Virus record (IMG/VR): IMGVR_UViG_3300044568_003163 | Span: 186,001-250,000 of that record | Direction: 5' to 3' (one strand) | DNA: 64,000 nt | Shown: positions 9,753 through 56,104 of the stretch, in pieces | Layout of the letters: each line of letters opens with the position of its first letter | How positions within the stretch are numbered: position 1 is the first letter of the stretch | Made by a program: the position numbers and the translations under genes | The notes under the pieces: generated by a model | What the model saw: the letters and a program-made list of their open reading frames with translations, nothing else | What the model was told of the DNA's origin: nothing | Database searches by the model: none

Positions 9753-10397
9753 TTATTTTTGTATACGATATGCAATTGCTACACCATAATCGTCTTGACC
9801 TTCAAAGTGCTTTTCAACTCTAAAAATACTATTATCTATAGCTTCTACAAATACGGTAGGACCTGGATGATAATTAGAATCATGGAATATTACAATACCG
9901 TTATCAGAAAGCATATCGACATATTGCCAATCATTTATTACTGCGTTTAAAGAATGCCATCCATCGATAAATAAAATCGAGATTTTTTCTAATCCTATTT
10001 TCTTTGCATAACTTTTTACATTAGATCGATTAAATGAGTTTTCCCTTATTGTGAAGATATTCTTTTCAGCATTATCGAGATATGTTTTATCGTCTAAATC
10101 TACACCTAAGTATTTAATATGATCTGGCTTAGATTGAAATATTGCTTGAGTAAAAGAACCCATTTCATTACGAGAAATACCAATCTCTAAAATACCATGA
10201 GTCATGTAATTTTTAGTGATTGATTCAACTAATTTATAATTCTGAGATGAAACTTCAGCTGAACAGGTTTTCGTAAAAGAACTCCAATCTTCGTTATTAT
10301 CATATCCGGTCATTTGAGGGAGAAAGGAAAGACCGAATATGTCAGTTTTATCTTCTCTAACTTCAACCGGATGACCATTTATTATTAAGTTTTTCAT
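9753..10397 (-). CDS. Class I SAM-dependent methyltransferase (Methyltransf_24-like)
   Basis: ILEIG motif I, YLGVD, ILFIDGWH, GIVIFHD. Confidence 0.85.
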   Translation of the reverse strand: MKNLIINGHPVEVREDKTDIFGLSFLPQMTGYDNNEDWSSFTKTCSAEVSSQNYKLVESITKNYMTHGILEIGISRNEMGSFTQAIFQSKPDHIKYLGVDLDDKTYLDNAEKNIFTIRENSFNRSNVKSYAKKIGLEKISILFIDGWHSLNAVINDWQYVDMLSDNGIVIFHDSNYHPGPTVFVEAIDNSIFRVEKHFEGQDDYGVAIAYRIQK

Positions 10398-10406
10398 ATA
10401 TTTGTT

Positions 10407-11594: not shown

Positions 11595-11617
11595 TGTTAT
11601 TTATTATTTGTTATATG

Positions 11618-11938
11618 TTATATGACGTATTTGTCGTTAGTTTTCGAAGGAGTTTTTACTATTACCAACGAACAATCTTCTAAAAACTCAGGATCTGCGA
11701 TTTCATATGGGTAGATAATAAATATATCACCGGAAACAAGCTTTTTATCTTGAATTATCATGGTGCCTTCGATTAGATAGTTAATTTCTGTAGCTTCTTT
11801 ATGGTAATGAGTTTCCCATTTTTCACCTTTAACATGCTTTTTATAACAAACTTCGAAATCTCCAGTCTTATATGCAGTAGGTTCAAAGTTACCAACAAAC
11901 CATCCAGCTTTCATATCTTCAATCCTAAACAGTTCCAT
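11618..11938 (-). CDS. Cupin-fold protein
   Basis: HYHKEATEINYLIEG cupin motif 1; GDIFIIYP motif 2. Confidence 0.85.
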   Translation of the reverse strand: MELFRIEDMKAGWFVGNFEPTAYKTGDFEVCYKKHVKGEKWETHYHKEATEINYLIEGTMIIQDKKLVSGDIFIIYPYEIADPEFLEDCSLVIVKTPSKTNDKYVI

Positions 11939-12611
11939 ATAAATTGAGATATTTATTTAAGTCTTCGGGAGTACCAATTGGATGATGTTGATTAAATATG
12001 TAGATTCCAACTTGCATATTTTTCTCTAATATGTAGTTATATGAAGGAGCTACATAAAATTCTCCGTTTGTTCGATCATTTCTTTTTTGCATTTCTTCGA
12101 CAGAATCAAAAAAGTATTTTGCCTTTTTCCAATAGTGAAGTCCATTTGTTGCTATATTAGAAATAACTTGCTTTTCTTTTACTTCGGTTACTAGATTTTC
12201 TTCGTTTACCTTAACATATGAATTTTTGTTATGAGTTGAAATAAAACAACCTAAAAGAGCATCATATTTTCTTGCATGAGACAAAAATAACTCTCGATTC
12301 CAATCTTGTATTACTTGATCGCAATTAGTTATTATCAATTCATCTTCCATATCTATGAAATCTTTAACTAGATATGCAGTAGAAGCAGGACCTTCGGTTA
12401 TGTAATCTATATCGAATATCTTAACATCATCGTGAGTAAAATTATGAGACTTTTGTTTGATAATTAATATTTGATCGTCTTTATGATTGAAATTATCGAT
12501 GACATGCTCAATCATCGGTTTTCCTTTCCATGAGATAATTGGTTTAGGTTCATTATACTCAGATTCGTTGAATCGTGAACCTCTACCTGCTGCAGGAATA
12601 ATTATTTGCAT
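11925..12611 (-). CDS. Sugar-phosphate nucleotidyltransferase (NTP_transferase/GT-A)
   Basis: IIIPAAGRGSRF...PKP, TEGPAST, IITNCD, EKQVIS, NGEFYV, IGTPEDL. Confidence 0.9.
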   Translation of the reverse strand: MQIIIPAAGRGSRFNESEYNEPKPIISWKGKPMIEHVIDNFNHKDDQILIIKQKSHNFTHDDVKIFDIDYITEGPASTAYLVKDFIDMEDELIITNCDQVIQDWNRELFLSHARKYDALLGCFISTHNKNSYVKVNEENLVTEVKEKQVISNIATNGLHYWKKAKYFFDSVEEMQKRNDRTNGEFYVAPSYNYILEKNMQVGIYIFNQHHPIGTPEDLNKYLNLYGTV

Positions 12612-12620
12612 TGAATTTTT

Positions 12621-13421
12621 TTATTTTTTTGGTTGAAAGATTTCCACTACCGCATGTGGCCAATTATAGTACGATATACTTGCTTCTCTAGGATATTTTT
12701 TCATAACTTCTTCTGGATATTTAAGAGTATCGAAGAAAATATCTTCTTTCTCGATTACTAATACGTAATCGACTGGCTGCCATCCTGATTCTATTCGAGT
12801 TTTAGCTCGTTTTAATGCCTGTTCTTTTGTTCGGTATGTTATGTGCTTATGGCAAAAATTTACACTAATACTATTCATTGCTTGTGGTGGAATTGTTAAA
12901 CTATGTCCATTTCCATATACAAATTCTGGCTTCATTCTAAAATATCTATGCTCAGGAAATCCAGGCATCATACAATATTCTAGCATAGGCTCAATCAAAC
13001 CACCATTATTAGTAGTATTAGTCCAAGTTTCTCGTTGTGAAATGTGTGGAAAAAAATGAAGATTTCTAATCGTAACCGAATCAACATCAAAGTGATCGAT
13101 ACTTTCTAACATAGATAATGGATTACTTTCAGGGAATTCATCAGGATGAAGTACGGCTACCCATTTTTTATTAGGTGATATTTCTTTTGCTTTCTCTAAA
13201 AGAAATCCTCTAATTGAATCGTTTGATATTCCATGTACTACGTTTTCGTCTCTTTCATAATATTTTACTTCTGGAAATCTAGAACATATTTCTCTACCAA
13301 TCTCATCATCACTACCATCTAATACTAATATTGGATCGAAATATTTAGAGACTACATTTAAGTATTCTTCGAGAATATCATTCTCGTCTCTCATTATTAA
13401 AATTCCTACTTGTTTATCCAT
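12621..13421 (-). CDS. Glycosyltransferase family 2-like protein
   Basis: RDENDILEEYL, VLDGSDD, WVAVLHPDEF (DxD-like). Confidence 0.75.
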   Translation of the reverse strand: MDKQVGILIMRDENDILEEYLNVVSKYFDPILVLDGSDDEIGREICSRFPEVKYYERDENVVHGISNDSIRGFLLEKAKEISPNKKWVAVLHPDEFPESNPLSMLESIDHFDVDSVTIRNLHFFPHISQRETWTNTTNNGGLIEPMLEYCMMPGFPEHRYFRMKPEFVYGNGHSLTIPPQAMNSISVNFCHKHITYRTKEQALKRAKTRIESGWQPVDYVLVIEKEDIFFDTLKYPEEVMKKYPREASISYYNWPHAVVEIFQPKK

Positions 13422-13960
13422 TATCGTAAAGTGTTATATGTTGAAAGTACTTTATTTATACGTAATGGTGAAGTTTTAGAAGCACATTCATATGCAAAAA
13501 TACCATCAGCTGCATATATTCCTAACTCCCATCTAGTAGTCTCAATCAAAGAGTGAGAAACCACGAAATTATGACTATCTGTGTGATTAACCCCTATAGA
13601 ATCGGCATTCAATCTTAGTGTGCCATTAGGCCATTCTTGCGGAAAAGTTAAAAAATCGAATTTTACATTTTTTATGCTTTCGTATAAATCTTTATGTAAA
13701 ATTGTATCGTCGTCATTAAAATAAACAAAGCCTTTTTCTATTTTATCGATACCAAAATTTCGTTGACCGTTTCCTGAGAAGCTAGCTGGATCTTTATGTG
13801 CATATGGCTCACAATTTTCCGGAATCAAATCAGATGATGGTAATTCTTCGGCGTCAAAAACTACGATCCATCTATAATTTTCTCTAGGAATGTTTATGCT
13901 TTTAGCTATTATGTGTAGATTTTCTGGTCTACTACAAGGGGTTATGATATTCAAAAACAT
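13421..13960 (-). CDS. Glycosyltransferase family 2-like protein
   Basis: IITPCSRPENL, WIVVFD, QRNFGID, VYFNDDD. Confidence 0.8.
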   Translation of the reverse strand: MFLNIITPCSRPENLHIIAKSINIPRENYRWIVVFDAEELPSSDLIPENCEPYAHKDPASFSGNGQRNFGIDKIEKGFVYFNDDDTILHKDLYESIKNVKFDFLTFPQEWPNGTLRLNADSIGVNHTDSHNFVVSHSLIETTRWELGIYAADGIFAYECASKTSPLRINKVLSTYNTLR

Positions 13961-19737: not shown

Positions 19738-22700
19738 TTAGAACATAGATACTTTAGTCTTAACTGTAACTTGAGATAAAGCAGCTACCATAGCAGTTTC
19801 TATATCTCTTGCGGATATAGAAGCTCCTGGTTTAGAAGATGCATGAACTATTGGTTTTTCTTTCATAGCTTTTCCTGCAGGAGTAGCAGCAGTAGGAGTA
19901 GAAGCAGTTTCTGTACCACCAGTTGCACCAGCACTTGAACCTGAATCTTCATTAAGTTTCTTAAGTCCATTTAATAAATCTTCAAAAGCCTTTTCAATAG
20001 ATTCTGCAATTTTTTCACCAATAACTTCAGGCGATTTAGACATAATAGCTAATGATTTCATCATTGAGTCGGTTGTTGTAAGTTTTTCTAAGTCCATGCC
20101 ATTAACATGACCTTTGAATAACTGCATAGATTTTTGAATTTTGTCGAAATTCACTGCTACTTTGTCTAATGAATTTTTAGGAGAAGCCATCGTAACAATG
20201 TTAGATGTAAACTTGTCCATATATTCTAATTTCTTAGGTAAACCTTTATTTAATGCAGGATCGAATACTTTAAATATCGAACTTGTGAAATTTTGGAAAT
20301 TTAATGTGGCTTTATCGGTAGATTCTAATTTAGAAAATGTATTAATTCCAGTCGACAAAGATGACATTATTTTAATCATACTAGGTAAATTATTAAGAGC
20401 TCCATTAATAACGTCTTGATTTTTATTATAGAAATCTCCTACATTATAAACTTCAGTACCAAATAAAGAAAATCCCTTTAAATTATTATTAGCCTTTTCG
20501 AATATTGCTAAATCGGAAAATTTAACAATAGACTTAGACATATCTAATAATATCTTAATCATATTAGGTAGAGTACTAAGAGCTCCGTTGATAATACCTT
20601 TGTGAGTTTCGAAATATCCTCCTATTTTATAGATTCCTGTACCGAACGTAACTAATTTAGGTATAGTTTCAATTGCTTTATCGATACTATCTAATTTAGA
20701 AAATGTTGTAACTGATTCTGCTAATGAAGACATAGATTTTACCATTTTAGGTATAGAACTTATACCACCATCAATGGTTTCAGCATGTTGCTTATAAAAA
20801 ACTCCGACATTATAGATTCCTTTACCTATAATCATCATTACTGAATTGATAGTTGTTCCTGCCTTTTTAAGCATAGCATCTGTTATAGCTACTGGAGTTC
20901 CTGGTACTAATTTAGTATTTGTGCCTGTACCTACTGCAGTCATTGGAGTAATTGTACCAGTAGCAATTTTTATTACAGAATCAGTAACTTTAGCAACTAC
21001 ATCTCCAACTCCAGAGATAGCCTTTATACCTTTTGCGATATATCCATCTCCCCAGAAAGAAGAAGAATCATCCTCTTTTTTACCTATATCATAAAATCCA
21101 GTAGCTATAACTTTAAGGATATCCATTATTGTAGTAGCAGCATTAGTTAAATCTTTATCTGAAAGTATTTTTGGTTTTCCTGGTACTAGTTTAGCTTTAG
21201 AGGTTCCACCATCAATTAAATCAAAAGTGGGAATTTCTCGTTTAGCCATCATTAGAACTGAATCTACTATGTTTTTAAGATTTTCTCCTACTCCGGCTAA
21301 AGCTTTAACACCTCTAGCAATAAAACCACCAGCGAAAACTCCTTCAGAAGCTGCTTCATCTTTACCAATATCACTAAACGCTTTAGCTACAACTCCGATA
21401 ACAGTAGCTATACTTTTACCAGCAGATTCAATTTCCTTTTCACCTATTTTGGTTACACCTTTAGGTACTAATTTAGCTTTCGAAGTACCAGCATTAACAA
21501 CCTCAAATTCAACAAATTGCATAGTAGCAAATTGCTTTACACCTGCTGCAAGAGAAACAATAGTATCTCCTGAATTTTTAAGAGATGCAACACCAGCAGA
21601 AACAAAACCTCCGCCGAATACCATATCATATAAAGGATTTCCTGATGGTTGTCCTTTATCGAGTCTTCCTACTAATGCAAATGGTTCAGCTATTGCAGTA
21701 ATAACTTTTGCCATTCCGTTAGCCGCATTAGTAAAATCAGATTCACCTAATTTTCTTCTTGATTTTATAACTAACTTAGCTTTTGAAGTTCCTGCTCCAA
21801 TAACTTCATATTCATTTACTTCTAAATTTGCCCATGCTTTAACTCCTTCGGCTAATGACGATAGCACATTACCTGCCATACTAAGTGAAAGTATACCAGT
21901 CATCAAATCAATTGGATCTATATTAATTCCTAATTTTTTCTGTCTTTCTTTATCTGTAACTATTGTAAATGCTTTTGCAATAGAACCTATAGTTGATTCC
22001 AAAGCAACTCCATCTTCTGGAGTAAAACCAGAAGTTTTAAATATAGTTAGTCCTTTAGATATTGCAATTAATGCAATACCTGCACCTACCATTGCTGGAA
22101 CGGTTATGGTTAATAAGGCTGCTCTAGCTGCTGCTTGGCCAGCAAATTTAAGTCCTTCGAGAACTCCTCCAGGGAATCTACCTCCTAAGAATCCGTTAAT
22201 TATTGAACTTAATCCATATTCTAAATTATCTCCATCTTCTTTATTAAATCCAGCACTTTTAAATATCGCTAATGCACCAGTTATAGGTAATAAAGCTACC
22301 GATGCAGCTGTCATTGCAAGTGAACCTAATAGTATAAGAGGAGAACCTAAACCAGCAAGTGCCATAGAACCTGCCAAACTTTTAACTGATGCACCTAATG
22401 CATCTGCATCAGGAATTGTCATTCCGGCAGTTTTAAATACGGCAAGAGCACCGGTTATAGGTAATAGGGCTACTGAAGCTACTAACATCGCAGCTGAACC
22501 TAAAAGAATAAGTGGAGAACCTAAACCAGCAAGTGCCATTGAACCAGCTAAACTTGAAATAGATAAACCTAATGCTATCGCATCATCTTTTGTTACTCCT
22601 ATAGTTTTAAATACTGCAAGTGCTCCAGATATAACTAATAGAGAAACTCCAGCTAAAATCATCGAGGCTGAACCTAATGCAATAAATATAGCACCAGCAC

Positions 22701-25566
22701 CAGCAGCAGCCATTGCAAGTCCTAAACCTACAACAATTGCACCTAATATTAAAGCATCTTCAGTAGTAACACCTGCTTTTTTAAATACTAAAACTCCTGC
22801 AGCAATAACAACTAATGCAATTCCAGCAAGAATCATTACTCCAGCACCAAGACCAATTTCTACGAAATTATCTCCGGCTATTTTCATTGCTAGTCCTAGA
22901 CCTGCAACAATAGCACCTAATAAAATGGCATCGCCAACTCCTACACCGGATTCTTTAAATTTAGTAAGAGCGTATGCTAATATTAATATTGCAATAGAAG
23001 CAAATCCTAATACCATAGAACCTAATCCTATTTCTTTCCAATATTGACCGAAAAGATACATCGCCATTCCAGTTACGGCTAAAATTCCTCCTAGTAATAA
23101 AATATCTGTTACCTGTAAGTTTATTGATTGAAACATCGCTAAACTATATGTAAAGAATAAAATAGAAAGAGCCATAAAAGATAAAGCCAATGTTCCCATT
23201 GCAATAGTTTTCCAATTCTTACCTATTTCATATGCAATAAATGCAAGTAATCCTATTGCCAATCCAGTAAATAAAACTGCCATAGGTGTGACCGAAGCTG
23301 CAAATAACATTACAACTGATCCTATAATTAATGCACCGAGTGCAAATAAAGTTAATCCAATTACTGCTTTTGCAATATTTCCTAAGCTTTTATTTAACAT
23401 TTCTCCTACTTGTTTAGCAATCCAAGCAATAAGTCCAATCATTATACCAAAAGCTATTACTTGTAAAACTCCTGCTGCTCCTACTGATTGTGCAAAATGA
23501 ATAACTAATTGAGTTATCAATACAAGTCCTAACATAAATAAGGACATAGCTATTAGAGTAGATCCTTTCATATTAGCGCCACCCATAGCTTCAATAACCA
23601 TTGTAGTAGTTTTTGCTAATATATAAGTCATCAAACCAAATAATAATATAGATTTAAGAGACTGAGGTGGATTTTGCATTGCCTTTGAAATAACAACTAA
23701 AGATACTGCTTGTATTAAACCTGTCACTGCCGCAGATAAAAGATCCATATTAGTTAAATCAGTCTTAGACTCACCTACCTTTTTAGCTAACATAAGGGTT
23801 ATTTGAGATAGGATAAAAATAGCTCCAGTAAATAAAACAATATTTAATGCGACTGTCGTCAAATCGTTTTGAGTATTAAATGCCATAATTGTTGCTGCAG
23901 CAGTAACTAACACTCCAAGTATAGTAGCTATAACCATTACGGTTTGAACATCACCTTCAGTAACACCAGCATCTTTTATTCCTTGATTAACTGCAGTAAT
24001 TCGTTTAACCATAAATCCAAGAACCATAGCACCAACTAATACAAATGGAGCTAATAATCCGGCAATCACACACATAGTTAATAAAGTACCAATAGAAAAA
24101 CTTAATGCAACTACAAATACTGCAGCAGCTAAAATATTTTCTGAATCTTTAACTACTTCCGAAATACCTCCTATTAAAGTTTTAATTGCAATATTAGTGA
24201 TTTTCACACCTAATATAATAAAAGGATTCCAAATAGCAGCTCTCCTTAAAGCACTTATAAGAATATCGACACCATATGCTAATAATGTAAATGAAAGTAC
24301 ACTCTTAATCGCAGTTTCATTATCAATTCCTTTAGAAGTAAGTAACATTGCTCTAACTGCTCCAGATAGATCTTCAGCTCTTCTAGTTAACACATTAGGT
24401 TTACTAAATAGGCCAGAAAGAAATCCAGGAGTTAAGGCTTTTATTAATTTGCCTATATTAGAAGCCGATAATACATTAATAGCAAAAACAGATTTTATAA
24501 TAGTTTCTGGTATTAATCTTGAACCTGTCTTAAGTAAAATATTTACAGCCTTAGATAAATCTTCGGCTCTTCCAACCATAGATCCACCACCAAAAAGTTT
24601 AGATAAAAACGATTCAGAAAGAACTTTTATCAATTTACCAATATTAGAAGCCGATAACATTGCATATGCAGTTATAGATACTGCAGCAGTTTTAAGATTG
24701 ATTCGATTTCCTGCTTTTAATAAGATATTTGTTGCATCTGAAATATTTTGAGCTAATCTAGACCAAAAACGACTTAAAATAAAATTCTTTATCGTCATAT
24801 TCTTATTAAAGAATTCAACAAATTCACCTAGTTTCGAAGCTACTATTAAATTATATGCAGCAATAGAAACTGCCGCTTGAGTTAAATCTATTCCTTTACC
24901 GGCATTAAGTAATATTCGAGTCGTATTTGATATAACAATTGCAAAATCCTCATACATTGAACCGAAAATCATATTCTTAATAGTCAATGTAGAACCTAGA
25001 AAATCAACAAATTCTTTTAATTTAGACGAACTAATTAATCCATATATTAGTAATGAATTTGCCGCAGTTCCCATATCCACTTCTTCAGACACAGAAAGTA
25101 ATTTAATCATTGCTTGATTAAGATAACCTGCACCTTCTACTAGGAAATCTCCAAACAAATAAGAAACTGCTAATACTTTAACTAATTTCATTAATGCTTC
25201 GGGAATTGAACCTATGGCAGCAGCTAATCCACCATCATTGGCTGCACCTCCACCACCGACTGAGTCGCTTTTAGATAGTTTAGCAACTTTAATTTCAATA
25301 GATGATAATAAAGAGTTTTGTATAACCGAATGTTGTTCTATTCGATTCATAAGTTCTGCACTTATTCCAAATACGGATTTAAGGTCAGATAAAAGAGTTG
25401 TATGCTTCTTTAGCTCGAGAGAAACGTCATTTTTTACAACGGTTTCTATCGAGCCAAGAAGTATTAAGGAATTGTCTTCTGCTAGTTTAGTAGCACTTAC
25501 CATTGCATCCATCTTCTTAAGAATGGATAACATTGCTTGATTTACACCTTCTGCCCTAACAGCCAT
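19738..25566 (-). CDS. Tail tape measure protein (1942 aa)
   Basis: Very long Ala/Gly/Leu-rich helical protein with internal repeats, directly downstream of tail chaperone genes. Confidence 0.8.
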   Translation of the reverse strand: MAVRAEGVNQAMLSILKKMDAMVSATKLAEDNSLILLGSIETVVKNDVSLELKKHTTLLSDLKSVFGISAELMNRIEQHSVIQNSLLSSIEIKVAKLSKSDSVGGGGAANDGGLAAAIGSIPEALMKLVKVLAVSYLFGDFLVEGAGYLNQAMIKLLSVSEEVDMGTAANSLLIYGLISSSKLKEFVDFLGSTLTIKNMIFGSMYEDFAIVISNTTRILLNAGKGIDLTQAAVSIAAYNLIVASKLGEFVEFFNKNMTIKNFILSRFWSRLAQNISDATNILLKAGNRINLKTAAVSITAYAMLSASNIGKLIKVLSESFLSKLFGGGSMVGRAEDLSKAVNILLKTGSRLIPETIIKSVFAINVLSASNIGKLIKALTPGFLSGLFSKPNVLTRRAEDLSGAVRAMLLTSKGIDNETAIKSVLSFTLLAYGVDILISALRRAAIWNPFIILGVKITNIAIKTLIGGISEVVKDSENILAAAVFVVALSFSIGTLLTMCVIAGLLAPFVLVGAMVLGFMVKRITAVNQGIKDAGVTEGDVQTVMVIATILGVLVTAAATIMAFNTQNDLTTVALNIVLFTGAIFILSQITLMLAKKVGESKTDLTNMDLLSAAVTGLIQAVSLVVISKAMQNPPQSLKSILLFGLMTYILAKTTTMVIEAMGGANMKGSTLIAMSLFMLGLVLITQLVIHFAQSVGAAGVLQVIAFGIMIGLIAWIAKQVGEMLNKSLGNIAKAVIGLTLFALGALIIGSVVMLFAASVTPMAVLFTGLAIGLLAFIAYEIGKNWKTIAMGTLALSFMALSILFFTYSLAMFQSINLQVTDILLLGGILAVTGMAMYLFGQYWKEIGLGSMVLGFASIAILILAYALTKFKESGVGVGDAILLGAIVAGLGLAMKIAGDNFVEIGLGAGVMILAGIALVVIAAGVLVFKKAGVTTEDALILGAIVVGLGLAMAAAGAGAIFIALGSASMILAGVSLLVISGALAVFKTIGVTKDDAIALGLSISSLAGSMALAGLGSPLILLGSAAMLVASVALLPITGALAVFKTAGMTIPDADALGASVKSLAGSMALAGLGSPLILLGSLAMTAASVALLPITGALAIFKSAGFNKEDGDNLEYGLSSIINGFLGGRFPGGVLEGLKFAGQAAARAALLTITVPAMVGAGIALIAISKGLTIFKTSGFTPEDGVALESTIGSIAKAFTIVTDKERQKKLGINIDPIDLMTGILSLSMAGNVLSSLAEGVKAWANLEVNEYEVIGAGTSKAKLVIKSRRKLGESDFTNAANGMAKVITAIAEPFALVGRLDKGQPSGNPLYDMVFGGGFVSAGVASLKNSGDTIVSLAAGVKQFATMQFVEFEVVNAGTSKAKLVPKGVTKIGEKEIESAGKSIATVIGVVAKAFSDIGKDEAASEGVFAGGFIARGVKALAGVGENLKNIVDSVLMMAKREIPTFDLIDGGTSKAKLVPGKPKILSDKDLTNAATTIMDILKVIATGFYDIGKKEDDSSSFWGDGYIAKGIKAISGVGDVVAKVTDSVIKIATGTITPMTAVGTGTNTKLVPGTPVAITDAMLKKAGTTINSVMMIIGKGIYNVGVFYKQHAETIDGGISSIPKMVKSMSSLAESVTTFSKLDSIDKAIETIPKLVTFGTGIYKIGGYFETHKGIINGALSTLPNMIKILLDMSKSIVKFSDLAIFEKANNNLKGFSLFGTEVYNVGDFYNKNQDVINGALNNLPSMIKIMSSLSTGINTFSKLESTDKATLNFQNFTSSIFKVFDPALNKGLPKKLEYMDKFTSNIVTMASPKNSLDKVAVNFDKIQKSMQLFKGHVNGMDLEKLTTTDSMMKSLAIMSKSPEVIGEKIAESIEKAFEDLLNGLKKLNEDSGSSAGATGGTETASTPTAATPAGKAMKEKPIVHASSKPGASISARDIETAMVAALSQVTVKTKVSMF
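22260..22620 (-). repeat. Roughly 58-aa tandem repeat within tape measure
   Basis: SLAGSMALAGLGSPLILLGS occurs twice; DNA GAGAACCTAAACCAGCAAGTGCCAT at 22341 and 22515 (174 bp apart). Confidence 0.8.
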
Positions 25567-33124: not shown

Positions 33125-36100
33125 TTAAATGTAGTTACCTGTTGCGATAGTACCAGTTCTAAGAATTGTAGTTCTATGAACTAATACACCCATTCCTCTT
33201 ACTGGTTCGATGTAAGTATCAAGAATACCGATGTTGTTATCAATAATCTCGTTAGTATTATTAGTCGAATCCATGATGTTGTTGAAATCGTAAAGACCTC
33301 CATCAGAAAGGATTTGAGATAAGAAATTATCTGCAAGAGTTTTAATTTCTAATCTATTTTGAGCTGTGTTAAATTCCCAACGGTAATTTTTAAGAATAGC
33401 TTCGATACCATCTTGAATGTATATCAATAATTCTCTTACGTGAATTTGAGAAAGTGCAGATTTAACTGTTTGTTGAGCAGTTTGGTTAGCATTAATAGTT
33501 AATCCAAAACCTCTCTTGTTAACTATTGCGTTATATCCGAATGGTTCGATCCAATCTAAATCAACTCTATCGAATGCGTATTCAACTCCAACTAATCCGG
33601 CTCCAGTTACAACACCTCTACGAGGACCAGCAACTATTGAATATGGAAGAGCTAAGTTATATTTGTCAATGTACAAGTTAGAAACATGTGCAGCACATGG
33701 AACTGATGTATTACTTCCATTTTCTCTTATTACTAAGTTAGGACCATAGAATGCTCCATAATTAGCACCATCAGCAATACCTGGTAAGGTAAATACATTA
33801 GATGGGTTAGATGCTAAATTACCTCCAGTAGATACATATTGAGTGTCAAATGAAGTAGTTGAATCCATTTTAAATAATGGATTAGTACTTTCTTTAAGTT
33901 GCTTAACCGATGGCATATTTAAGATAGCTAAAGCTGATTGACGATTCTTAGCTAACTTAGTTAATCTAATTTTTGAAGCTGGTTCAATTAATCCTTCGAA
34001 TGAATCGACGATATAACGGAACGTAATAGTTTCTCTATCAACTAATCCTTGAGCAATGTTTGTATCGGTCATTACATCTAAGATAGCGTTTTGTCTGTCT
34101 CCTGAACCGTTAGGTACTTGAGCATCTCTTAAAGTATAACCATTAAGAGCCGAGAATCTATAATATTGAACGAAGTTTCTAATATCTTTATATCTTTCTA
34201 CTTCATTAGTAGGAGAAATGTATATCGGATCATTAGTTGTTACTTTAATATAACCATAGTTAGCAGAAAGTGGATCAGAGATTTTAACTACTGAGATAAT
34301 TCTAGTTAAACGAGATTTTCCAGTATGAAGTTTACCATCATTTGGAGTAGGTACTAAATCTAATTTAGAAGGAGTTCCTGTACCACCAAAGTTTTGTACT
34401 AAGTATTGTCCTTTAGCAATTTGACCAGTAAATCCTGAAGCTCCTAATGGACCAGTTACAGTATCATTCAACCAAATAACGTTAGTTGGATTAGCAGTTC
34501 CAGTTCTAGCAACATCAATCAATAAAGATTCGTTAATGTCTCCAGTATATGTTTTAAAATCAAAAGTTGCAGTAGCACCAATCGAAGTAGCACCTGTTAC
34601 TAAATCTACATTTTCAAAAGCTGAAACAGTAACATAATTAACTTTGTCACTTAATGTTGGAGTTGTTGAAGCAAATGCAGATGTAAATGTAGCTCCAGTG
34701 AAATCATTAGTACTAAATCTATCGAATTGAACATATGAATATACTGCAGTAGAACCAGTAGCTGAGATATTAATTCTATCTCCATCGGTAATGATACCTG
34801 AAAGATTAGTCTGATAAACATCAGAATCTTGACCGGCATAAACAATTTTAGGAGATGCACTAGTATCAGCAAATTCCCATTTATTTGAACGGATTATTTT
34901 AAGACTAGCAGTTCCACCACCAGCGGTAGTTCCAGTTCCACCAACGAATAAGAATCCATTAGAAGTACTAGTAGGACCGGTTACACCATCACCTACAACT
35001 AATTTAACTTTAAGAGTTAAGATGTCGTTAGTATCATCGTATATTTTAGAGTTAATAGAAATATAATTAGCCGAACTTGTTGGACCGGTAGTTACGTTAG
35101 ATGAACCTTGAACGAATGTTTTATTAACTGCAAGTGAATCAATAAATTCAGTAAATAATGCACGAGTAGCAAAACCAGTAACTAATGAACCTGTAGCAGC
35201 AGCTGAAGGACCGTAAATAGTTATCGTGTCATAAAAACCAGTAGCACCAGTTGATGTATAACCAGTAGCACCTTGGATTGCAGAAGATGCAGAATAAAGT
35301 GCATTAGCAACAACTCCATTAGTAGCACCTACTGTTAAGGTAAATACTACTGCAGTAGCACCAGAAACTTTTGCGTAAGATAAATCTTCTTGAATTCCAC
35401 CAAAATATGATAGGAAATTAAGAGCGCCAGGTTGTTCTGATTCTAAGGTGTGACCTACAGTATCAATTAAATCTCCAGAAATCAATCTTGAAACTCCACC
35501 TAAATTATAAGGTTGATCGTCATAAGCTGCTGGATTAAGTGCCATTAAAACTCCAGTTCTAGAAGTTTCAAGGTTAACTAAATCTTGAATATAAATGTTA
35601 TTACCGTTTTTGTCTTGGAAATCAGGAATCATAGCACCAGTATAAACACCAAGTACATTAACTTGAGGTAATGCAAGGAATTCGGTTAGACCATCTCTCA
35701 CAAAACCATATTGGTCAGTGAATACTTTTCTAAGTCCAGTATTAGTAAAATAAGGACCGAAAATAGGATCGATTGCTAATGTTGTGTAATTAGAGAAATC
35801 TCCTTCTACAATAATTACATCTATAAGATAATCTGAGATATAATCATTTTCATTCATCCAGAATGGTACTTGACCAACACCAAACCAATCTTTAGCAATT
35901 ACATCAAATCCAAGAGTATCAGATTTTCTAGTAACCACAGAAACAGGTCTTCTACCAACGTTTGCATAATTAAGTAAACGTTGAGTTGCTGGTGAAGCAT
36001 TGTTGGTTGGTAGATCAGTTGCAGCTGATTGAACTAATGCAGCAGGATCAGTGAACCAGAATTTATCTTTATTAAAGAAAGAAGAAACTGGAGCAGAATC

Positions 36101-36457
36101 TACTAATGCGTTATTATTAGTAGCACAAGTTGAGACAGATTGGAAATTAGATGTATCTAATGTGTCATTTAATTTAAGTAAGTTAAGAACGATCACTGGT
36201 CCTCTATCCAAACAAGTTAAAACTGTTCGGTGGAAATATGAACCTTTTCTTTCTAATACTGCGTCGATTTCACCGAATACAGATTTAAAAAATACTGAAT
36301 CCTGTACAAATACTGGTGTATTAAAAGGCCCTTTTTTAGAGAATCCGATTATAAGACGAATAGTCTCAGAAGGGATGTTAGTGATTTGGCTCTTGTCGAA
36401 TTCAAGTCGGTAAACACCCGAAGATTTGAATTGTTGTAATGATGGTGATAGTGCCAT
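33125..36457 (-). CDS. gp18: Tail sheath protein (gp18-like, 1110 aa with large Thr/Gly-rich insertion)
   Basis: SSGVYRLEFDKS, GFSKKGPFNTP, VAGPRRG, SQIHVRELLIYI, YRWEFNT, DSTNNT. Confidence 0.93.
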   Translation of the reverse strand: MALSPSLQQFKSSGVYRLEFDKSQITNIPSETIRLIIGFSKKGPFNTPVFVQDSVFFKSVFGEIDAVLERKGSYFHRTVLTCLDRGPVIVLNLLKLNDTLDTSNFQSVSTCATNNNALVDSAPVSSFFNKDKFWFTDPAALVQSAATDLPTNNASPATQRLLNYANVGRRPVSVVTRKSDTLGFDVIAKDWFGVGQVPFWMNENDYISDYLIDVIIVEGDFSNYTTLAIDPIFGPYFTNTGLRKVFTDQYGFVRDGLTEFLALPQVNVLGVYTGAMIPDFQDKNGNNIYIQDLVNLETSRTGVLMALNPAAYDDQPYNLGGVSRLISGDLIDTVGHTLESEQPGALNFLSYFGGIQEDLSYAKVSGATAVVFTLTVGATNGVVANALYSASSAIQGATGYTSTGATGFYDTITIYGPSAAATGSLVTGFATRALFTEFIDSLAVNKTFVQGSSNVTTGPTSSANYISINSKIYDDTNDILTLKVKLVVGDGVTGPTSTSNGFLFVGGTGTTAGGGTASLKIIRSNKWEFADTSASPKIVYAGQDSDVYQTNLSGIITDGDRINISATGSTAVYSYVQFDRFSTNDFTGATFTSAFASTTPTLSDKVNYVTVSAFENVDLVTGATSIGATATFDFKTYTGDINESLLIDVARTGTANPTNVIWLNDTVTGPLGASGFTGQIAKGQYLVQNFGGTGTPSKLDLVPTPNDGKLHTGKSRLTRIISVVKISDPLSANYGYIKVTTNDPIYISPTNEVERYKDIRNFVQYYRFSALNGYTLRDAQVPNGSGDRQNAILDVMTDTNIAQGLVDRETITFRYIVDSFEGLIEPASKIRLTKLAKNRQSALAILNMPSVKQLKESTNPLFKMDSTTSFDTQYVSTGGNLASNPSNVFTLPGIADGANYGAFYGPNLVIRENGSNTSVPCAAHVSNLYIDKYNLALPYSIVAGPRRGVVTGAGLVGVEYAFDRVDLDWIEPFGYNAIVNKRGFGLTINANQTAQQTVKSALSQIHVRELLIYIQDGIEAILKNYRWEFNTAQNRLEIKTLADNFLSQILSDGGLYDFNNIMDSTNNTNEIIDNNIGILDTYIEPVRGMGVLVHRTTILRTGTIATGNYI

Positions 36458-48015: not shown

Positions 48016-48074
48016 TACAAATATAACAAAATTAAGTGTTATATAAAAATGTTTTAATGGAAAGTTATTAACAA
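48016..48074 (-). promoter_or_regulatory. Early promoter TATATTTGTA with TTGTTAATAAC box (48-bp offset)
   Basis: Boxes at 48016-48025 and 48064-48074. Confidence 0.7.
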
Positions 48075-48553
48075 ATAACAACTGCTCTAGTTCGTGTAGA
48101 GTTTACTAAACGATAGGTTAAGTCAATATAAATAGCTCCAGTATCTCCATTTATGTTTACAATATAATCAGTAGGTCTAATTAATTCCCAGAAGATCGAA
48201 GTATTTTCTTCGGTTTCAGGATCTATGAACGCGGAATTAACTCTCCATAATTGAATTTGAACATCCGCTAAGGAAGGAGCCATCCTTCTACCGATTAAAA
48301 ATCCTGGAGTATATAGAGATATTTCTGCCGCTTCGATTATAAGTCTTTGATTTCCTGCAGAAATCCATTCCTTAATAAATTTTGATGTTGCTGCAGTGGA
48401 TCCAGTAGGTCCAGTAATTCCAGGTAATCCATTTATACCGGTTGCTCCTTGCGGACCAGTAGGTCCTTCTGATGATGGTAAGTATACCGGATTTCCAAAA
48501 AAATCTACTAGGATTCCATTTATTAAATATACTTGTTGACTACTTGTAGGCAT
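48068..48553 (-). CDS. Small protein with short collagen-like G-x-x stretch
   Basis: GPTGPQGATGINGLPGITGPTGST. Confidence 0.75.
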   Translation of the reverse strand: MPTSSQQVYLINGILVDFFGNPVYLPSSEGPTGPQGATGINGLPGITGPTGSTAATSKFIKEWISAGNQRLIIEAAEISLYTPGFLIGRRMAPSLADVQIQLWRVNSAFIDPETEENTSIFWELIRPTDYIVNINGDTGAIYIDLTYRLVNSTRTRAVVIC

Positions 48554-54000: not shown

Positions 54001-56104
54001 TTATAGGATATTCATTCCATAAATTATTTAATCGTTCCTCTGCTAATGAAAGTATTGCGGATATTGTCCATAAATCAGTAGAATTACCTTCTTCGGCAGT
54101 TTCTTTATATTTATCGATAGCTGCTTTAGCTATATCTAAATTAGCTTGAATTTTATCTACTTCAGTTTGTAGGATTTCCTTTTTAGCTTCATCGGTTTCA
54201 TTCTTAAGCTCTTCTTTCTTTGAATCTAATCCGGTTTTGATTGCATCGTACTTTTCAGTTGCAGTACGAAGTTTAAATTCTTCGATAGTTTCTGTTTGTT
54301 CTTCTTCAGGAGCTTCTTTAGGAGATTCACTAGTAGCTTTCTCTAATTTTTCTGGATCAGTCTTTTTTGCTGATGCTTCACCTTGCTTTTCTGCTTCGTC
54401 TGACTTTTTTTCTAAGTCCTTCATCATTTCTATAGCCTTGTCTAATTGACCTTTAAGAGCTTTTTTCTTTTTATCACTAGGAATTAAAGTAGCAAGTTGA
54501 GTAAGAAATTCAACACGATTTTTAGCACGTTGTTTCGATATGTACAACCACGAAAAGAAATTAGCTTTACCTAATAGACCTCCAACTAATTCGTTGGTAG
54601 CATCTTTTTGATTTTCTACTGCTGAATCAATATCTTTCAATTGAGAAACATATGAATCGGTAGCAATTTCTACTTGTTCTCTAAAAGCTTCAAGTTTTTC
54701 TTCGTCAGTCATATCCGTATCTTCGCTTTTGAAATTATCTTTAACGTCATCAACTTCTACTTGTGCCTTTCTTTTAGCAGTAGCCGCATCAGATATTTCC
54801 TTTTCTAGAGCTCTAATTTCAGCAGCATCTTCTTTTGGATCTAAATTAGCCTTTTCTTTTCTAAGTCTATTAAGTTTTTTATCGGCATTAGATAAATTAG
54901 ACTTAGCTTGCTCTAATTTTTCTTTTGTCTTTTCGTTAGACTTTTTAATGTTTTTAAGTTCTTCTTCGTCTGAATCTTCTTCCTCTTCGGCATTTATATC
55001 GTCAGCAGTATCATCAGTTGCAGTTGCACCAGTAGGTCCAGTAGTTCCTTCTGGTTCTTTTTCGGTCGATGTAGTTGATCCGGTAGGACCTGTAGTTCCA
55101 TCAATTGCAGTAGTTCCTTCTGGTTCCCTTTCAGAAGATGAAGTTGCACCAGTAGGTCCAGTAGTTCCTTCTGGGTTTTTAACTTCTGGCTCTTCTGCTG
55201 GAGTTTCTTCTTGCTTTAATTTTTCTATTTCGGCTTTAAGATTATCATAAGCTTCTTTTGCAGATTGTTTACCTTCAACAGATGAATTATCTAATTCTAA
55301 TTTAAGTCGATCTAAATCAGCTAATTTAGACGCAAGTAAAGCTTCTTTTGCTTTTTTCTCTAATTCGGCTTTATCTAATTGGTCTTCTCCATCTTCTTTA
55401 AGATTAGAAATTTCCTTTTTGATTTTAGCAAATTTTTCATAGTTAACATAAGATTCCTGTCTTGCTTTTGCTATTTTCTTAGCGTCATTAGCATCGTCAG
55501 CCTTCTTAATGTCTTTCTGTTCAGCAGATAATTTAGCATTTTCTGCTTGATATTTTTTATGAGTTACTTCTAATTCTCGTCTCTTTTCTGGATCGTCGAC
55601 AACAGAAGTTATTTTTTTCTTAATTGATTGAATTTCGTCTTTAACCTTAGCCTTAATTTTACTAATCTTTTCTAATTTATCAGTATCTGAAGCACCTTTA
55701 GGTTGTGGAGTAGTTTTAGGTTCAGTTGGTTTAGGAGTTTCCTTTGCCTTAGGTTCTACCTTAGGCTTAGGTGCATCTTTTTTCTTTGGTTCAACTTTGG
55801 CTTTCTTTGCAGGAGTTTTATCCGGTGCTTTAGGTTTAACTTTTTTAGATACCTTCCTAGCTTGTTTTCTTGCTGCTCTTTTTTGTGCAGCAGTTTGAAC
55901 TTCAACTAAAGCAATATATTGTGGTAGACTTGAAAAGTCATATTCTTTTAATGATTCAAATACATCTCCTAATGTGGCATCCTCATCGACAAAAATATCG
56001 AAATCTTCACATATCGTTTCAAAAAGAGATTCTAACAGATCTAAGTATATTTGATCGTTTACTTCTTCTTCGTATTTTTCTAATAAATAGTTGTTTAATT
56101 TCAT
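53993..56104 (-). CDS. Highly charged coiled-coil protein, probable prohead core/internal protein, with GTTGPTG repeats
   Basis: Lys/Glu/Asp-rich; acidic N-terminus with L-x-E sites; co-transcribed downstream of the capsid gene region. Confidence 0.7.
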   Translation of the reverse strand: MKLNNYLLEKYEEEVNDQIYLDLLESLFETICEDFDIFVDEDATLGDVFESLKEYDFSSLPQYIALVEVQTAAQKRAARKQARKVSKKVKPKAPDKTPAKKAKVEPKKKDAPKPKVEPKAKETPKPTEPKTTPQPKGASDTDKLEKISKIKAKVKDEIQSIKKKITSVVDDPEKRRELEVTHKKYQAENAKLSAEQKDIKKADDANDAKKIAKARQESYVNYEKFAKIKKEISNLKEDGEDQLDKAELEKKAKEALLASKLADLDRLKLELDNSSVEGKQSAKEAYDNLKAEIEKLKQEETPAEEPEVKNPEGTTGPTGATSSSEREPEGTTAIDGTTGPTGSTTSTEKEPEGTTGPTGATATDDTADDINAEEEEDSDEEELKNIKKSNEKTKEKLEQAKSNLSNADKKLNRLRKEKANLDPKEDAAEIRALEKEISDAATAKRKAQVEVDDVKDNFKSEDTDMTDEEKLEAFREQVEIATDSYVSQLKDIDSAVENQKDATNELVGGLLGKANFFSWLYISKQRAKNRVEFLTQLATLIPSDKKKKALKGQLDKAIEMMKDLEKKSDEAEKQGEASAKKTDPEKLEKATSESPKEAPEEEQTETIEEFKLRTATEKYDAIKTGLDSKKEELKNETDEAKKEILQTEVDKIQANLDIAKAAIDKYKETAEEGNSTDLWTISAILSLAEERLNNLWNEYPING
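55022..55174. repeat. 33-bp exact direct repeat (55022-55054, 55142-55174) with a degenerate middle copy
   Basis: AGTTGCACCAGTAGGTCCAGTAGTTCCTTCTGG twice, encoding PEGTTGPTGAT. Confidence 0.9.

What the first reader, a model, noticed from the sequence alone, without database searches (positions are those of the whole stretch)
34430..35370. G-[AP]-[TS] motifs concentrated in virion proteins: candidate O-glycosylation sequons
Seen: the sheath insertion has about 11 G[AP][TS] motifs in about 310 aa (SGAT, VGAT, QGAT, TGAT, YGPS, TGPT x2, TGAT x2, IGAT, LGAS), while the conserved sheath core has very few. Others occur in the major capsid (5: MGAT, SGAT, LGAS, TGAT, IGAT), the 53993-56104 protein (GTTGPTGAT repeats), the 48068-48553 protein and the tape measure C-terminus. 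Known: GPT repeats of Bacillus BclA are O-glycosylated on Thr, and some mycobacteriophages glycosylate their virions. Inference: these are acceptor sites for the phage GT/RLP cluster, giving a glycan-shielded virion.
Basis: partly seen in the sequence, partly recalled or inferred. Interest (0 to 1): 0.7.

Follow-up and report, generated by a model that had tools for sequence, protein, structure and literature searches.

The report
Candidate glycosylation motif on phage virion proteins
A jumbo phage of probable Bacteroidota hosts carries the tripeptide Gly-(Ala/Pro)-Thr far more often than chance in predicted loops of its tail sheath, capsid and a large unannotated protein, and it encodes an enzyme related to known protein glycosyltransferases, so a sugar-coated virion is a reasonable but untested idea.

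Summary
The sheath (window 33125-36457, minus strand) has 11 G[AP][TS] sites, all in residues 366-672. Local shuffles expect 1.3, and none of 5000 reached 11. The motif is order-specific, with consensus T-G-[A/P]-T, and is read in frame only. All 11 sites lie in predicted loops of a clade-specific insertion. The enrichment recurs in 38 of 40 homologous sheaths. It also recurs in the capsid protein and a 1273-aa protein across three divergent genomes. Site positions turn over while density stays high. The rest of each proteome is at or below expectation, and two outgroup phages show no enriched protein.

Glycosylation is not shown. Two things support it indirectly. G-A-T, G-P-T and G-A-S are proven acceptors of Clostridioides difficile SgtA, a GT2-TPR O-GlcNAc transferase. 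The phage also encodes a 406-aa GT2, 2.8 kb outside the window, whose only solved relatives are SunS, ThuS and GmaR, all protein or peptide glycosyltransferases.

Against it: three outgroup phages carry this enzyme without a motif-rich sheath. The in-window sugar cluster could instead serve DNA or other glycans. The "tape measure" claim fails (3 sites against 4.0 expected).

Verdict: a real motif; the sequon reading is the best single hypothesis, at about 0.4.

The parts
33125..36457 (-). Tail sheath gene, 1110 aa
   Evidence: Pfam Phage_sheath_1C at residues 1000-1096. tblastn matches annotated sheaths of Tenacibaculum, Flavobacterium, Lak and huge phages. Foldseek matches the P1, T4 and phiKZ sheaths.
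34358..35440 (-). Clade-specific sheath insertion (residues 340-700) holding all 11 motifs
   Evidence: Distant sheaths align only to the flanks. Only 7 representatives among 1.8 billion proteins match it. The AF2 model of residues 352-704 has pLDDT 80 and pTM 0.75 and is beta-rich. No fold match was found in PDB, BFVD or AFDB. No paralogue exists in the genome.
35354..35362 (-). Motif GAT at residue 366 (SGAT)
   Evidence: Predicted loop. Motif kept in 8 of 40 homologues.
35321..35329 (-). Motif GAT at residue 377 (VGAT)
   Evidence: At a strand end running into a loop. Kept in 10 of 40.
35264..35272 (-). Motif GAT at residue 396 (QGAT)
   Evidence: Loop just after a short helix. Kept in 24 of 40.
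35240..35248 (-). Motif GAT at residue 404 (TGAT)
   Evidence: Loop. Kept in 10 of 40.
35204..35212 (-). Motif GPS at residue 416 (YGPS)
   Evidence: Loop just after a strand. Kept in 27 of 40.
35078..35086 (-). Motif GPT at residue 458 (TGPT)
   Evidence: Loop. Kept in 13 of 40 by column triplet and in 21 of 40 by motif start in that column.
34970..34978 (-). Motif GPT at residue 494 (TGPT), the most conserved site
   Evidence: Loop. Kept in 37 of 40. G494 and P495 are invariant.
34688..34696 (-). Motif GAT at residue 588 (TGAT)
   Evidence: Loop or helical turn just after a strand. Kept in 19 of 40.
34586..34594 (-). Motif GAT at residue 622 (TGAT)
   Evidence: Loop or short bridge. Kept in 28 of 40.
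34571..34579 (-). Motif GAT at residue 627 (IGAT)
   Evidence: Loop. Kept in 7 of 40.
34436..34444 (-). Motif GAS at residue 672 (LGAS)
   Evidence: Loop. Kept in 9 of 40.
56783..58405 (-). Major capsid protein (540 aa) with 5 motifs at residues 57, 184, 196, 205 and 340
   Evidence: Pfam Gp23, E 4.9e-36. 5 sites against 1.2 expected, p=0.006. Orthologues have 3 and 6. Only 1 of 10 motif columns is shared by all three genomes.
55010..55177 (-). Three PEGTTGPTG(A/S)T repeats in the 703-aa Lys/Glu-rich protein 53993-56104
   Evidence: 6 sites against 0.46 expected. Orthologues in G001 and G002 have none. No Pfam or PHROG match.
48386..48469 (-). Short collagen-like G-X-Y run with 3 motifs in the 161-aa protein 48068-48553
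   Evidence: Weak Pfam Collagen match, E 9.7e-4. PHROG collagen-like minor tail and tail fibre families. Sequence shown.
19738..25566 (-).
   Evidence: 3 sites against 4.0 expected. Orthologues have 0 and 2. No Pfam or PHROG family.
1628..2488 (-). UDP-glucose/GDP-mannose dehydrogenase-like gene of the sugar cluster
   Evidence: Pfam PF03721 and PF00984, E about 1e-25.
5225..6100 (-). NAD-dependent sugar epimerase/dehydratase
   Evidence: Pfam PF01370, E 1.5e-44.
7311..8027 (-). Weak GT2-like protein (238 aa)
   Evidence: Pfam PF00535, E 2.3e-4, below the curated cut-off. No PDB sequence match.
9753..10397 (-). Methyltransferase-domain protein in the cluster
   Evidence: Pfam PF13578, E 6e-6.
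10407..11594 (-).
   Evidence: Pfam RuBisCO_large, E 1.9e-33. Found in only one of 12 related records, most of them fragments.
11925..12611 (-). Sugar nucleotidyltransferase
   Evidence: Pfam PF00483 and PF12804.
12621..13421 (-). Weak GT2_4-like protein (266 aa)
   Evidence: Pfam PF13704, E 1.1e-5, just below the cut-off. No PDB match.
13421..13960 (-). Very weak GT-A-like protein (179 aa)
   Evidence: Pfam GT43, E 5e-4, below the cut-off.

Best explanation
T-G-[Ala/Pro]-Thr(Ser) is most likely a short acceptor motif for cytoplasmic O-glycosylation of virion proteins.

Shown:
- The tripeptide is about 5-fold over-represented in the sheath insertion, and the excess depends on residue order.
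- It is restricted to the sheath insertion, the capsid protein, a 1273-aa protein and the fibre proteins.
- It sits in predicted loops.
- Its positions change between relatives while its density is kept.
- It is the dominant triplet of the phage's own collagen-like fibres.
- The phage encodes a GT2 with an invariant DxD motif whose only solved relatives are protein or peptide glycosyltransferases, plus nucleotide-sugar enzymes and weak extra GTs.

Inferred:
- The 406-aa SunS/GmaR/SgtA-like enzyme at genome 181992-183212 puts a first sugar on the Thr or Ser of exposed G-[AP]-T loops and of G-X-T fibre repeats before or during assembly.
- The in-window sugar cluster may supply or extend the glycan.
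- The result would be a glycan-decorated tail, head and fibres, acting as a shield or an adhesion surface.
For: Enrichment in the sheath:
- 11 sites against 1.3 expected, with 0 of 5000 shuffles reaching 11. G[^AP][TS] is not enriched. TG.T occurs 8 times against 0.95 expected.
- Across 40 homologues the mean is 7.3 against 1.44 expected. G[AP][TS] occurs 292 times against 75 for the reverse order.

Turnover with kept density:
- 39 insertion columns carry a motif in at least one homologue.
- At least 120 gains or losses are needed on the core tree, against 42-48 for control patterns.
- The excess remains outside the five conserved columns (3.95 against 1.44).
- In the capsid protein, 1 of 10 motif columns is shared by all three genomes. 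In p1273, 2 of 29 are.

Restriction to a few proteins:
- Counts in G000/G001/G002 are 11/4/10 for the sheath, 5/3/6 for the capsid protein and 9/14/18 for p1273.
- Portal, terminase, p1194 and p689 are at expectation.
- The rest of each proteome has 30 against 46, 35 against 38 and 26 against 45 expected.
- Control phages pT24 and LR756501 have no protein below p<1e-3.

Structure and coding:
- All 11 sites are in predicted loops. 29 of 33 motif residues are coil by my count from the DSSP strings, against 56% coil for the whole insertion.
- The motif is read in frame only (88 in-frame against 2-9 in the other sense frames).
- In the fibre triplets, Y is Thr in 62% and X is Ala in 26% and Pro in 21%.

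Enzyme:
- A profile of the 406-aa GT2 hits only SunS (3e-18), ThuS (2e-15) and GmaR (3e-15) in the PDB.
- D117 and D119 are invariant.
- Its ESM Atlas neighbours are GT2+TPR clusters, one of them named after SunS.

Precedent: SgtA (GT-A plus TPR) adds O-GlcNAc to Thr or Ser in free peptides containing TGATG and GPTGA, and in single-site GAT and GAS peptides (PMC7157674, Tables 1-2).

Distribution: the GT is present in 7 of the 8 clade records of 94 kb or more and absent from 6 outgroup phages whose sheaths lack the motif.
Against: - No glycan has been observed; every link from motif to enzyme is circumstantial.
- LR756501 (GT 52% identical), LR745206 and LR756502 carry the GT, yet their sheaths have 0-1 motif. 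LR756501 has no non-collagen protein enriched.
- Some clade members have only 2-4 sheath motifs. One of them, G008, has the GT.
- Five sheath sites are positionally conserved, which also fits a structural role.
- No TPR match was found in this GT by Pfam.
- Co-folding the GT with the insertion gave no answer.
- The GT-motif co-occurrence rests on essentially one clade, so it is confounded by phylogeny.
- Solvent exposure could not be computed, because only secondary structure is returned for models.
- p1273 and the other large enriched proteins have no Pfam or PHROG assignment, so calling them virion proteins is an inference.
Confidence: 0.4

Rival explanations
1. The motif is an unmodified structural or biophysical loop motif. 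Small, flexible, hydrophilic G-A-T or G-P-T turns would be favoured in exposed loops of this clade's beta-rich virion domains, for folding, solubility or packing in the sheath lattice. No sugar would be attached.
For: - All sites lie in loops next to strands.
- Five sites are conserved in 19-37 of 40 homologues, and G494 and P495 are invariant.
- Gly and Pro are loop formers in any case.
- GT-positive outgroup phages do without the motif.
Against: - Most sites are not positionally conserved, yet density is maintained. At least 120 gains or losses are needed, and 3.95 against 1.44 sites remain outside the conserved columns.
- The same tripeptide is enriched in three unrelated proteins but not in the other roughly 380 proteins, which also have turns.
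- Other sheath insertions of similar size have none.
Confidence: 0.3
2. The motif is a recognition or docking element unrelated to glycosylation. It could be a site for another modification of Thr such as phosphorylation, or a short collagen-mimicking patch that binds the phage's G-X-T fibres or a host surface component.
For: - The motif is identical to the fibre triplet unit.
- It occurs in the sheath, the capsid protein and a few large unannotated proteins, and in predicted loops.
Against: - No kinase or other candidate enzyme was identified.
- Isolated tripeptides cannot form a triple helix.
- No precedent was found in the papers searched.
Confidence: 0.1
3. The motif spread by a mutational process. 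Short patches from the repetitive collagen-like genes (GGT GCT ACT units) would have been copied into other virion genes by micro-recombination, without selection on the peptide.
For: - Five of the 11 sheath sites use the same nine bases, GGTGCTACT.
- The genome holds hundreds of such units in three fibre genes.
Against: - These are simply the preferred codons of an AT-rich genome, and other sites use GGA, CCA, ACA and TCA.
- The sites are isolated 9-base units with unrelated flanks.
- A mutational process would not spare the non-structural genes or favour loops.
Confidence: 0.06
4. The enrichment is a chance or compositional artefact of a Gly/Ala/Thr-rich region.
For: The insertion is richer in G (11.6%) and in T plus S (25%) than the core.
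Against: - None of 5000 composition-preserving shuffles reach 11.
- Other orders of the same residue classes give 0-7.
- The result replicates in 38 of 40 homologues and in two other proteins in three genomes.
Confidence: 0.01

Closest known systems
BclA-type exosporium glycoproteins and their GT2-TPR O-GlcNAc transferase (C. difficile BclA3/SgtA; B. anthracis BclA)
   Same: The acceptor tripeptides are the same (G-P-T, G-A-T, G-A-S). SgtA glycosylates short free peptides containing TGATG and GPTGA, and single-site GAT and GAS peptides (PMC7157674). The enzyme is a cytoplasmic GT-A/GT2 followed by a helical domain. The phage fibres are G-X-T collagen-like proteins.
   Different: Here many sites are isolated tripeptides in loops of globular proteins (sheath, capsid) rather than in a triple-helical repeat region. 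The host is Bacteroidota-like, not a Firmicute spore former. Direct homology of the phage GT to SgtA was not tested, because no SgtA sequence was available from a tool. No glycan has been shown.
SunS/ThuS glycocin S/O-glycosyltransferases and Listeria GmaR flagellin O-GlcNAc transferase
   Same: These are the only solved relatives of the phage's 406-aa GT2 (profile E 3e-18 to 3e-15). All modify Ser, Thr or Cys of proteins or peptides in the cytoplasm. The SunS alignment runs past the GT-A domain into the start of the helical region.
   Different: No Cys-rich glycocin precursor lies next to the phage gene. Pfam does not detect a C-terminal TPR in this protein. The acceptor is unknown.
Mycobacteriophage virion glycosylation (Freeman et al. 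2023, as cited in PMC12619734)
   Same: Phage-encoded glycosyltransferases modify capsid and tail proteins, and a shielding role has been proposed.
   Different: There the glycans are described at the C-termini of the capsid and tail-tube subunits. Here the candidate sites are internal loops of the sheath insertion, the capsid protein and a large unannotated protein, with a defined tripeptide. The GT family relationship was not tested.
Mimivirus collagen modification (bifunctional hydroxylase/glycosyltransferase L230) and glycosylated giant-virus fibrils (recalled from my own knowledge, not checked here)
   Same: A virus encodes both collagen-like proteins and the enzymes that glycosylate them.
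   Different: That system uses hydroxylysine-linked glucose and a different enzyme family. No hydroxylase was looked for or found here.
Glycan shields of enveloped viruses using N-X-S/T sequons (recalled from my own knowledge)
   Same: The evolutionary signature is alike: a short motif whose positions turn over while its density on exposed surfaces is kept.
   Different: That system uses N-linked glycans, host machinery and the secretory pathway. It is an analogy of pattern only.

Membership tests
Collagen-like triple-helix repeat (Pfam PF01391) | Long uninterrupted runs of G-X-Y triplets | tested here: not met
   The sheath gave only a sheath-domain hit against Pfam. Its motifs are isolated, with at most two consecutive triplets. 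The feature IS met by three other genome proteins (17 Collagen matches), and weakly by 48068-48553.
SgtA/BclA-type O-glycosylation of G-[AP]-[TS] | Acceptor tripeptide G-A-T, G-P-T or G-A-S accessible to the enzyme | tested here: met
   The sequence matches the peptides glycosylated in vitro (PMC7157674 Table 1). All 11 sheath sites are in predicted loops. True solvent exposure was not computed.
SgtA/BclA-type O-glycosylation of G-[AP]-[TS] | Cytoplasmic GT-A (GT2) enzyme with a DxD motif encoded alongside the substrates | tested here: met
   Pfam GT2, E 2.9e-13. D117-A-D119 is invariant in 25 homologues. No hydrophobic N-terminus is visible in the sequence. The enzyme is present in 7 of the 8 clade records of 94 kb or more.
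SgtA/BclA-type O-glycosylation of G-[AP]-[TS] | C-terminal TPR domain for protein-substrate binding | tested here: inconclusive
   No TPR Pfam hit in this protein at E<=1. One homologue, P0127, carries PF07719. 12-39% of members of neighbouring ESM Atlas clusters carry TPR families.
SgtA/BclA-type O-glycosylation of G-[AP]-[TS] | Sugar covalently attached to the Thr or Ser of the motif | not testable with these tools
   This needs mass spectrometry or glycan staining of virions or of co-expressed proteins.
SunS/ThuS/GmaR-like protein glycosyltransferases (GT2) | Closer in sequence to these enzymes than to polysaccharide-forming GT2s | tested here: met
   The profile search of the whole PDB returns only SunS, ThuS and GmaR at E<=1e-3.
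Mycobacteriophage-type virion glycosylation | Glycans at the C-termini of the capsid and tail-tube subunits | tested here: not met
   The candidate sites are internal: sheath residues 366-672 of 1110 and capsid residues 57-340 of 540. The description of the mycobacteriophage sites comes from PMC12619734. The original paper is not held.
Moraphages (aquatic Bacteroidota jumbo phages, PMC12619734) | Shared core VOGs, including a lysine-tRNA ligase-annotated VOG and four glycosyltransferase orthogroups | tested here: inconclusive
No class II aminoacyl-tRNA synthetase domain (PF00152) is present in the genome. No moraphage sequence was available for comparison.

The most novel reading that the evidence does not exclude
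A lineage of Bacteroidota jumbo phages uses T-G-[A/P]-T as a portable O-glycosylation sequon. It would be read by a phage-encoded SunS/SgtA-like GT2. It would have originated in the G-X-T collagen-like fibres and then been sown repeatedly by selection into surface loops of globular virion proteins (sheath insertion, capsid, a large putative tail or baseplate protein). The whole particle would then carry a phage-made glycan coat whose site positions evolve quickly, like a viral glycan shield.
Probability: 0.3. Interest if true: 0.8.

Novelty: new variant of a known kind. Interest (0 to 1): 0.6.

Why it matters
Virion glycosylation in tailed phages is so far documented mainly for mycobacteriophages, and no sequon is known for it. 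If this motif is an acceptor, three things follow:
- It would be the first sequence rule for predicting glycosylated phage proteins from genomes.
- It would link viral collagen-like fibres and globular virion proteins to one enzyme family. About 2,400 homologues of this GT2 exist in metagenomes.
- It would show that phages can evolve glycan coats by the same gain-and-loss dynamics seen in glycan shields of animal viruses.

This bears on phage immunogenicity, adhesion to polysaccharide-rich environments and stability. The test is cheap: co-express two genes and run mass spectrometry. If the motif turns out to be unmodified, it is still an unusual case of lineage-specific, virion-restricted selection on a tripeptide.

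Tried and rejected
- DNA-level motif: rejected. The pattern is in frame 88 times, against 2-9 in the other sense frames, and its codons vary.
- Insertion as a copy of another phage domain carrying the motif: rejected. No paralogue exists in the genome, and internal similarity is weak.
- Fold assignment of the insertion: nothing found. Foldseek against the PDB gave E>0.06, VIA-align gave Z<=5.4, and BFVD and AFDB clusters gave TM<=0.26.
- Weak repeated hits of insertion residues about 523-568 to beta-propeller-like repeat proteins P0046 and P0047: not pursued.
- Co-folding the GT with the insertion: no answer, so it counts neither for nor against.
- Co-occurrence with generic GT2: uninformative, because 9 of 12 relatives' records have GT2 and the other three are 17-25% fragments.
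- Co-occurrence with the RLP: fails, since only 1 of 12 records has it.
- Mapping the capsid motifs onto T4 gp23: no PDB sequence hit.
- PHROG and Pfam annotation of the large motif-rich proteins p1273, p1344, p190, p703 and the 1942-aa protein: no functional assignment.
- PDB relatives of the two weak in-window GTs: none.
- The Freeman et al. 2023 paper is not held.
- Moraphage membership by lysyl-tRNA synthetase domain: no hit.
- Lak-B5 sheath: the ORF is broken by in-frame stops, probably recoding, so its count is not informative.
Full report
**Context.** The window is bases 186001-250000 of a 294,034-bp IMG/VR virus record (CheckV completeness 91%, GC 32.8%). By my ORF call, 386 of 393 ORFs are on the minus strand. 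The window encodes a T4-like head module: portal 61178-62791, prohead protease 59208-61121, and a Gp23-type capsid protein 56783-58405. It also encodes a large terminase subunit at 36506-38344 and a 1110-aa tail sheath at 33125-36457. The closest database sheaths belong to uncultured huge phages, Prevotella Lak megaphages, and Tenacibaculum and Flavobacterium jumbo phages. A Bacteroidota host is therefore likely.

**Observation.**
- The 11 sheath motifs lie at residues 366-672, and the two flanks (749 aa in total) hold none.
- Shuffling residues 340-700 expects 1.3, and 0 of 5000 shuffles reach 11.
- The excess depends on residue order. G[AP][TS] occurs 11 times, against 0-7 for the five other orders. 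G[^AP][TS] is at expectation (9 against 9.2). TG.T occurs 8 times against 0.95 expected, so the consensus is T-G-[A/P]-T.
- Thr is the usual third residue (9 of 11).
- The signal is at the protein level. Genome-wide, with the three fibre genes excluded, the codon pattern is in frame 88 times, against 2-9 in the other sense frames.
- The "tape measure" part does not hold. The 1942-aa protein has 3 sites against 4.0 expected, its orthologues have 0 and 2, and it has no family assignment.

**What the region is.** Residues 340-700 are an insertion that distant sheaths lack.
- The insertion has 40 homologues at 39-98% identity, all inside sheaths of about 1025-1111 aa. Only 7 representatives among 1.8 billion proteins match it.
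- AlphaFold2 with these homologues gives a confident beta-rich model. Residues 352-704 folded alone reach pLDDT 80 and pTM 0.75.
- No convincing structural relative was found in the PDB, BFVD or AlphaFold DB clusters.
- All 11 motifs fall in loop positions beside strands. By my count from the DSSP strings, 29 of 33 motif residues are coil, against 56% for the whole insertion.
- Extra sheath domains face outward in solved sheaths such as T4 gp18. This is established knowledge and was not tested here, so surface exposure is an inference.

**Evolutionary pattern.** The enrichment holds in 38 of 40 homologues, with a mean of 7.3 against 1.44 expected. It also holds in a more distant IMG/VR subclade with 44-48% identity and 5-12 sites.
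- Five positions are fairly conserved: 494 in 37 of 40, 622 in 28, 416 in 27, 396 in 24 and 588 in 19. The rest are kept in 7-13 of 40.
- In total, 39 insertion columns carry a motif in some sequence. At least 120 gains or losses are needed on a tree built from the sheath core, against 42-48 for control patterns.
- Outside the five conserved columns the excess remains, at 3.95 against 1.44.
- Sheaths with different insertions are at expectation with 0-1 site. This covers LR756500, LR756501, LR745206, LR756502, LR756504, pT24, PTm1, MaF61 and PAU.

**Genome-wide pattern.** Three collagen-like fibre proteins hold 101 of the genome's 189 motifs. In their triplets, Y is Thr in 62%, and X is Ala in 26% and Pro in 21%. 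The following results come from masking the collagen runs.
- In this genome and two relatives fetched whole (G001 and G002, with sheath identities of 64% and 62%), 3-4 large proteins per genome are enriched at p<1e-3.
- The remaining roughly 280-380 proteins per genome are at or below expectation: 30 against 46, 35 against 38, and 26 against 45.
- Orthologue counts in G000/G001/G002 are 11/4/10 for the sheath, 5/3/6 for the capsid protein and 9/14/18 for a 1273-aa protein at genome 9286-13107.
- Portal, terminase and two other large neighbouring proteins are at expectation.
- Motif positions are again mostly not shared. 1 of 10 columns in the capsid protein and 2 of 29 in p1273 are common to all three genomes.
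- Control genomes pT24 (31 against 33) and LR756501 (142 against 118) have no enriched non-collagen protein.
- The function of p1273 and the other large enriched proteins is unassigned. Calling them virion proteins is an inference from their size and neighbourhood.

**Enzymes.** The "GT/RLP cluster" is real.
- It holds a UDP-sugar dehydrogenase, an epimerase/dehydratase, a nucleotidyltransferase, a methyltransferase, a RuBisCO-like protein and three weak GT-A-like proteins, all within window 1628-13960.
- A thymidylate-synthase-like gene (3737-5014) sits among them, so DNA hypermodification is a live alternative target.
- The RLP occurs in only one of 12 relatives' records, most of them fragments.

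The more telling gene lies 2.8 kb left of the window, at genome 181992-183212.
- It is a 406-aa GT2 with an invariant D-A-D motif.
- Whether queried as a single sequence or as a 25-sequence profile, it hits only SunS, ThuS and GmaR in the whole PDB, with profile E-values of 3e-18 to 3e-15. All three glycosylate Ser, Thr or Cys of proteins or peptides in the cytoplasm.
- Its ESM Atlas neighbours are GT2+TPR clusters, mostly viral, and one is named after SunS.
- No glycocin-like Cys-rich peptide is adjacent.

**Precedent.** C. difficile SgtA has a GT-A domain plus four TPRs and is 358 aa long. It adds beta-O-GlcNAc to Thr, and also to Ser, in free 12-17-residue BclA3 peptides. These include peptides containing TGATG and GPTGA, and single-site G-A-T, G-P-T and G-A-S peptides (PMC7157674, Tables 1-2).

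**Co-occurrence.**
- The SunS-like GT is present in 7 of the 8 clade records of 94 kb or more. The exception, G004, is a 47% fragment. The GT is absent from six outgroup phages whose sheaths lack the motif.
- However, it is also present in LR756501/3 (52% identity), LR745206 and LR756502, whose sheaths have 0-1 motif.
- Among eleven complete or near-complete genomes (this one at CheckV 91%), collagen-like proteins occur in 3 of 4 with the GT and 0 of 7 without it. My own Fisher calculation from those counts gives about 0.02, uncorrected for phylogeny.
- The GT thus tracks G-X-[T/S/Q] collagen-like fibres more widely. Scattering of the tripeptide onto globular virion proteins is specific to this clade.

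**Conclusion.** The motif is real, selected, confined to a few large proteins, located in predicted loops and positionally fluid. The best single mechanism is O-glycosylation of G-[AP]-T by the SunS/SgtA-like GT2, possibly extended with products of the in-window sugar cluster. I put this at about 0.4, because nothing shows a sugar on these proteins and GT-positive outgroups lack the scattered motif. The main rival, at about 0.3, is an unmodified loop motif.

**Known work.** Virion glycosylation is known in mycobacteriophages, and glycosylated G-X-T collagen-like proteins are known in spore formers and giant viruses. A defined tripeptide sown into sheath and capsid loops of a Bacteroidota jumbo phage would be a new variant of that theme. 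A 2025 description of aquatic Bacteroidota jumbo phages ("moraphages") notes four core GT orthogroups and raises virion glycosylation only as a possibility (PMC12619734). Whether this genome belongs to that lineage is not established.

Noticed in passing
window 10407-11594 (-): A RuBisCO-like protein (Pfam RuBisCO_large, E 1.9e-33) sits inside a phage nucleotide-sugar/GT cluster. Only one of 12 related records (G001) has it. Its role in a phage is unexplained.
   Followed up: partly
window 3737-5014 (-): A 425-aa thymidylate-synthase-family protein matches the Pfam model in two stretches, which suggests a large insertion. It lies among sugar genes and might be a pyrimidine hydroxymethylase feeding DNA hypermodification.
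   Followed up: no
genome 181992-183212 (-), 2.8 kb left of the window (L001:655-1875:-): A SunS/ThuS/GmaR-like GT2 with about 2,443 metagenomic homologues at E<=1e-5. Homologues also occur in the huge phages LR756501/3, LR745206 and LR756502, in Tunturiibacter phage Tunturi_5 and in Pseudomonas phage PaBG.
   Followed up: yes
genome 27895-30855 (-), 52373-55354 (+), 95722-96879 (-): Three collagen-like G-X-T fibre proteins. One of them is among the very few plus-strand genes. Relatives carry giant versions, such as a 3175-aa ORF at the start of G001 and 2.7-3.5-kaa ORFs in LR756501.
   Followed up: partly
window 53993-56104 (-): A 703-aa Lys/Glu-rich, probably coiled-coil protein just downstream of the capsid gene. 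It carries three PEGTTGPTG(A/S)T repeats that are absent from its orthologues in G001 and G002. It has no family assignment.
   Followed up: partly
sheath residues about 523-568 (window about 34754-34891): Weak repeated similarity to the blades of two repeat proteins, P0046 (E 1.9e-6) and P0047 (E 9e-4). Their repeats have the form '..VVYRGxDNxIHEL..'. This may be a single blade-like hairpin or a chance match.
   Followed up: no
whole genome G000: By a simple ORF call, 386 of 393 ORFs are on one strand. Cumulative GC skew falls steadily across the window.
   Followed up: no
window 27239-28615 and 28843-30672 (-): Phage-encoded type II topoisomerase subunits, one GyrA/ParC-like and one GyrB-like.
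   Followed up: no
window 52020-53516 (-): A 498-aa protein matching a PHROG family annotated as 'ribosomal protein S6 glutaminyl transferase' (RimK-like ATP-grasp), lying just downstream of the head-module genes.
   Followed up: no
rest of proteome in G000 and G002: Proteins outside the motif-rich set have fewer G[AP][TS] sites than composition predicts: 30 against 46.3 (Poisson p 0.007) and 26 against 45 (p 0.0015). G001 (35 against 38) does not show this, and pT24 as a whole proteome (31 against 33) does not either. This could be avoidance of off-target sites or a crude null model.
   Followed up: partly
L089 (Prevotella phage Lak-B5 sheath locus): Eight in-frame stops fall within the sheath match under genetic code 11, consistent with the stop-codon recoding reported for Lak phages. 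Its motif count is therefore unreliable.
   Followed up: no
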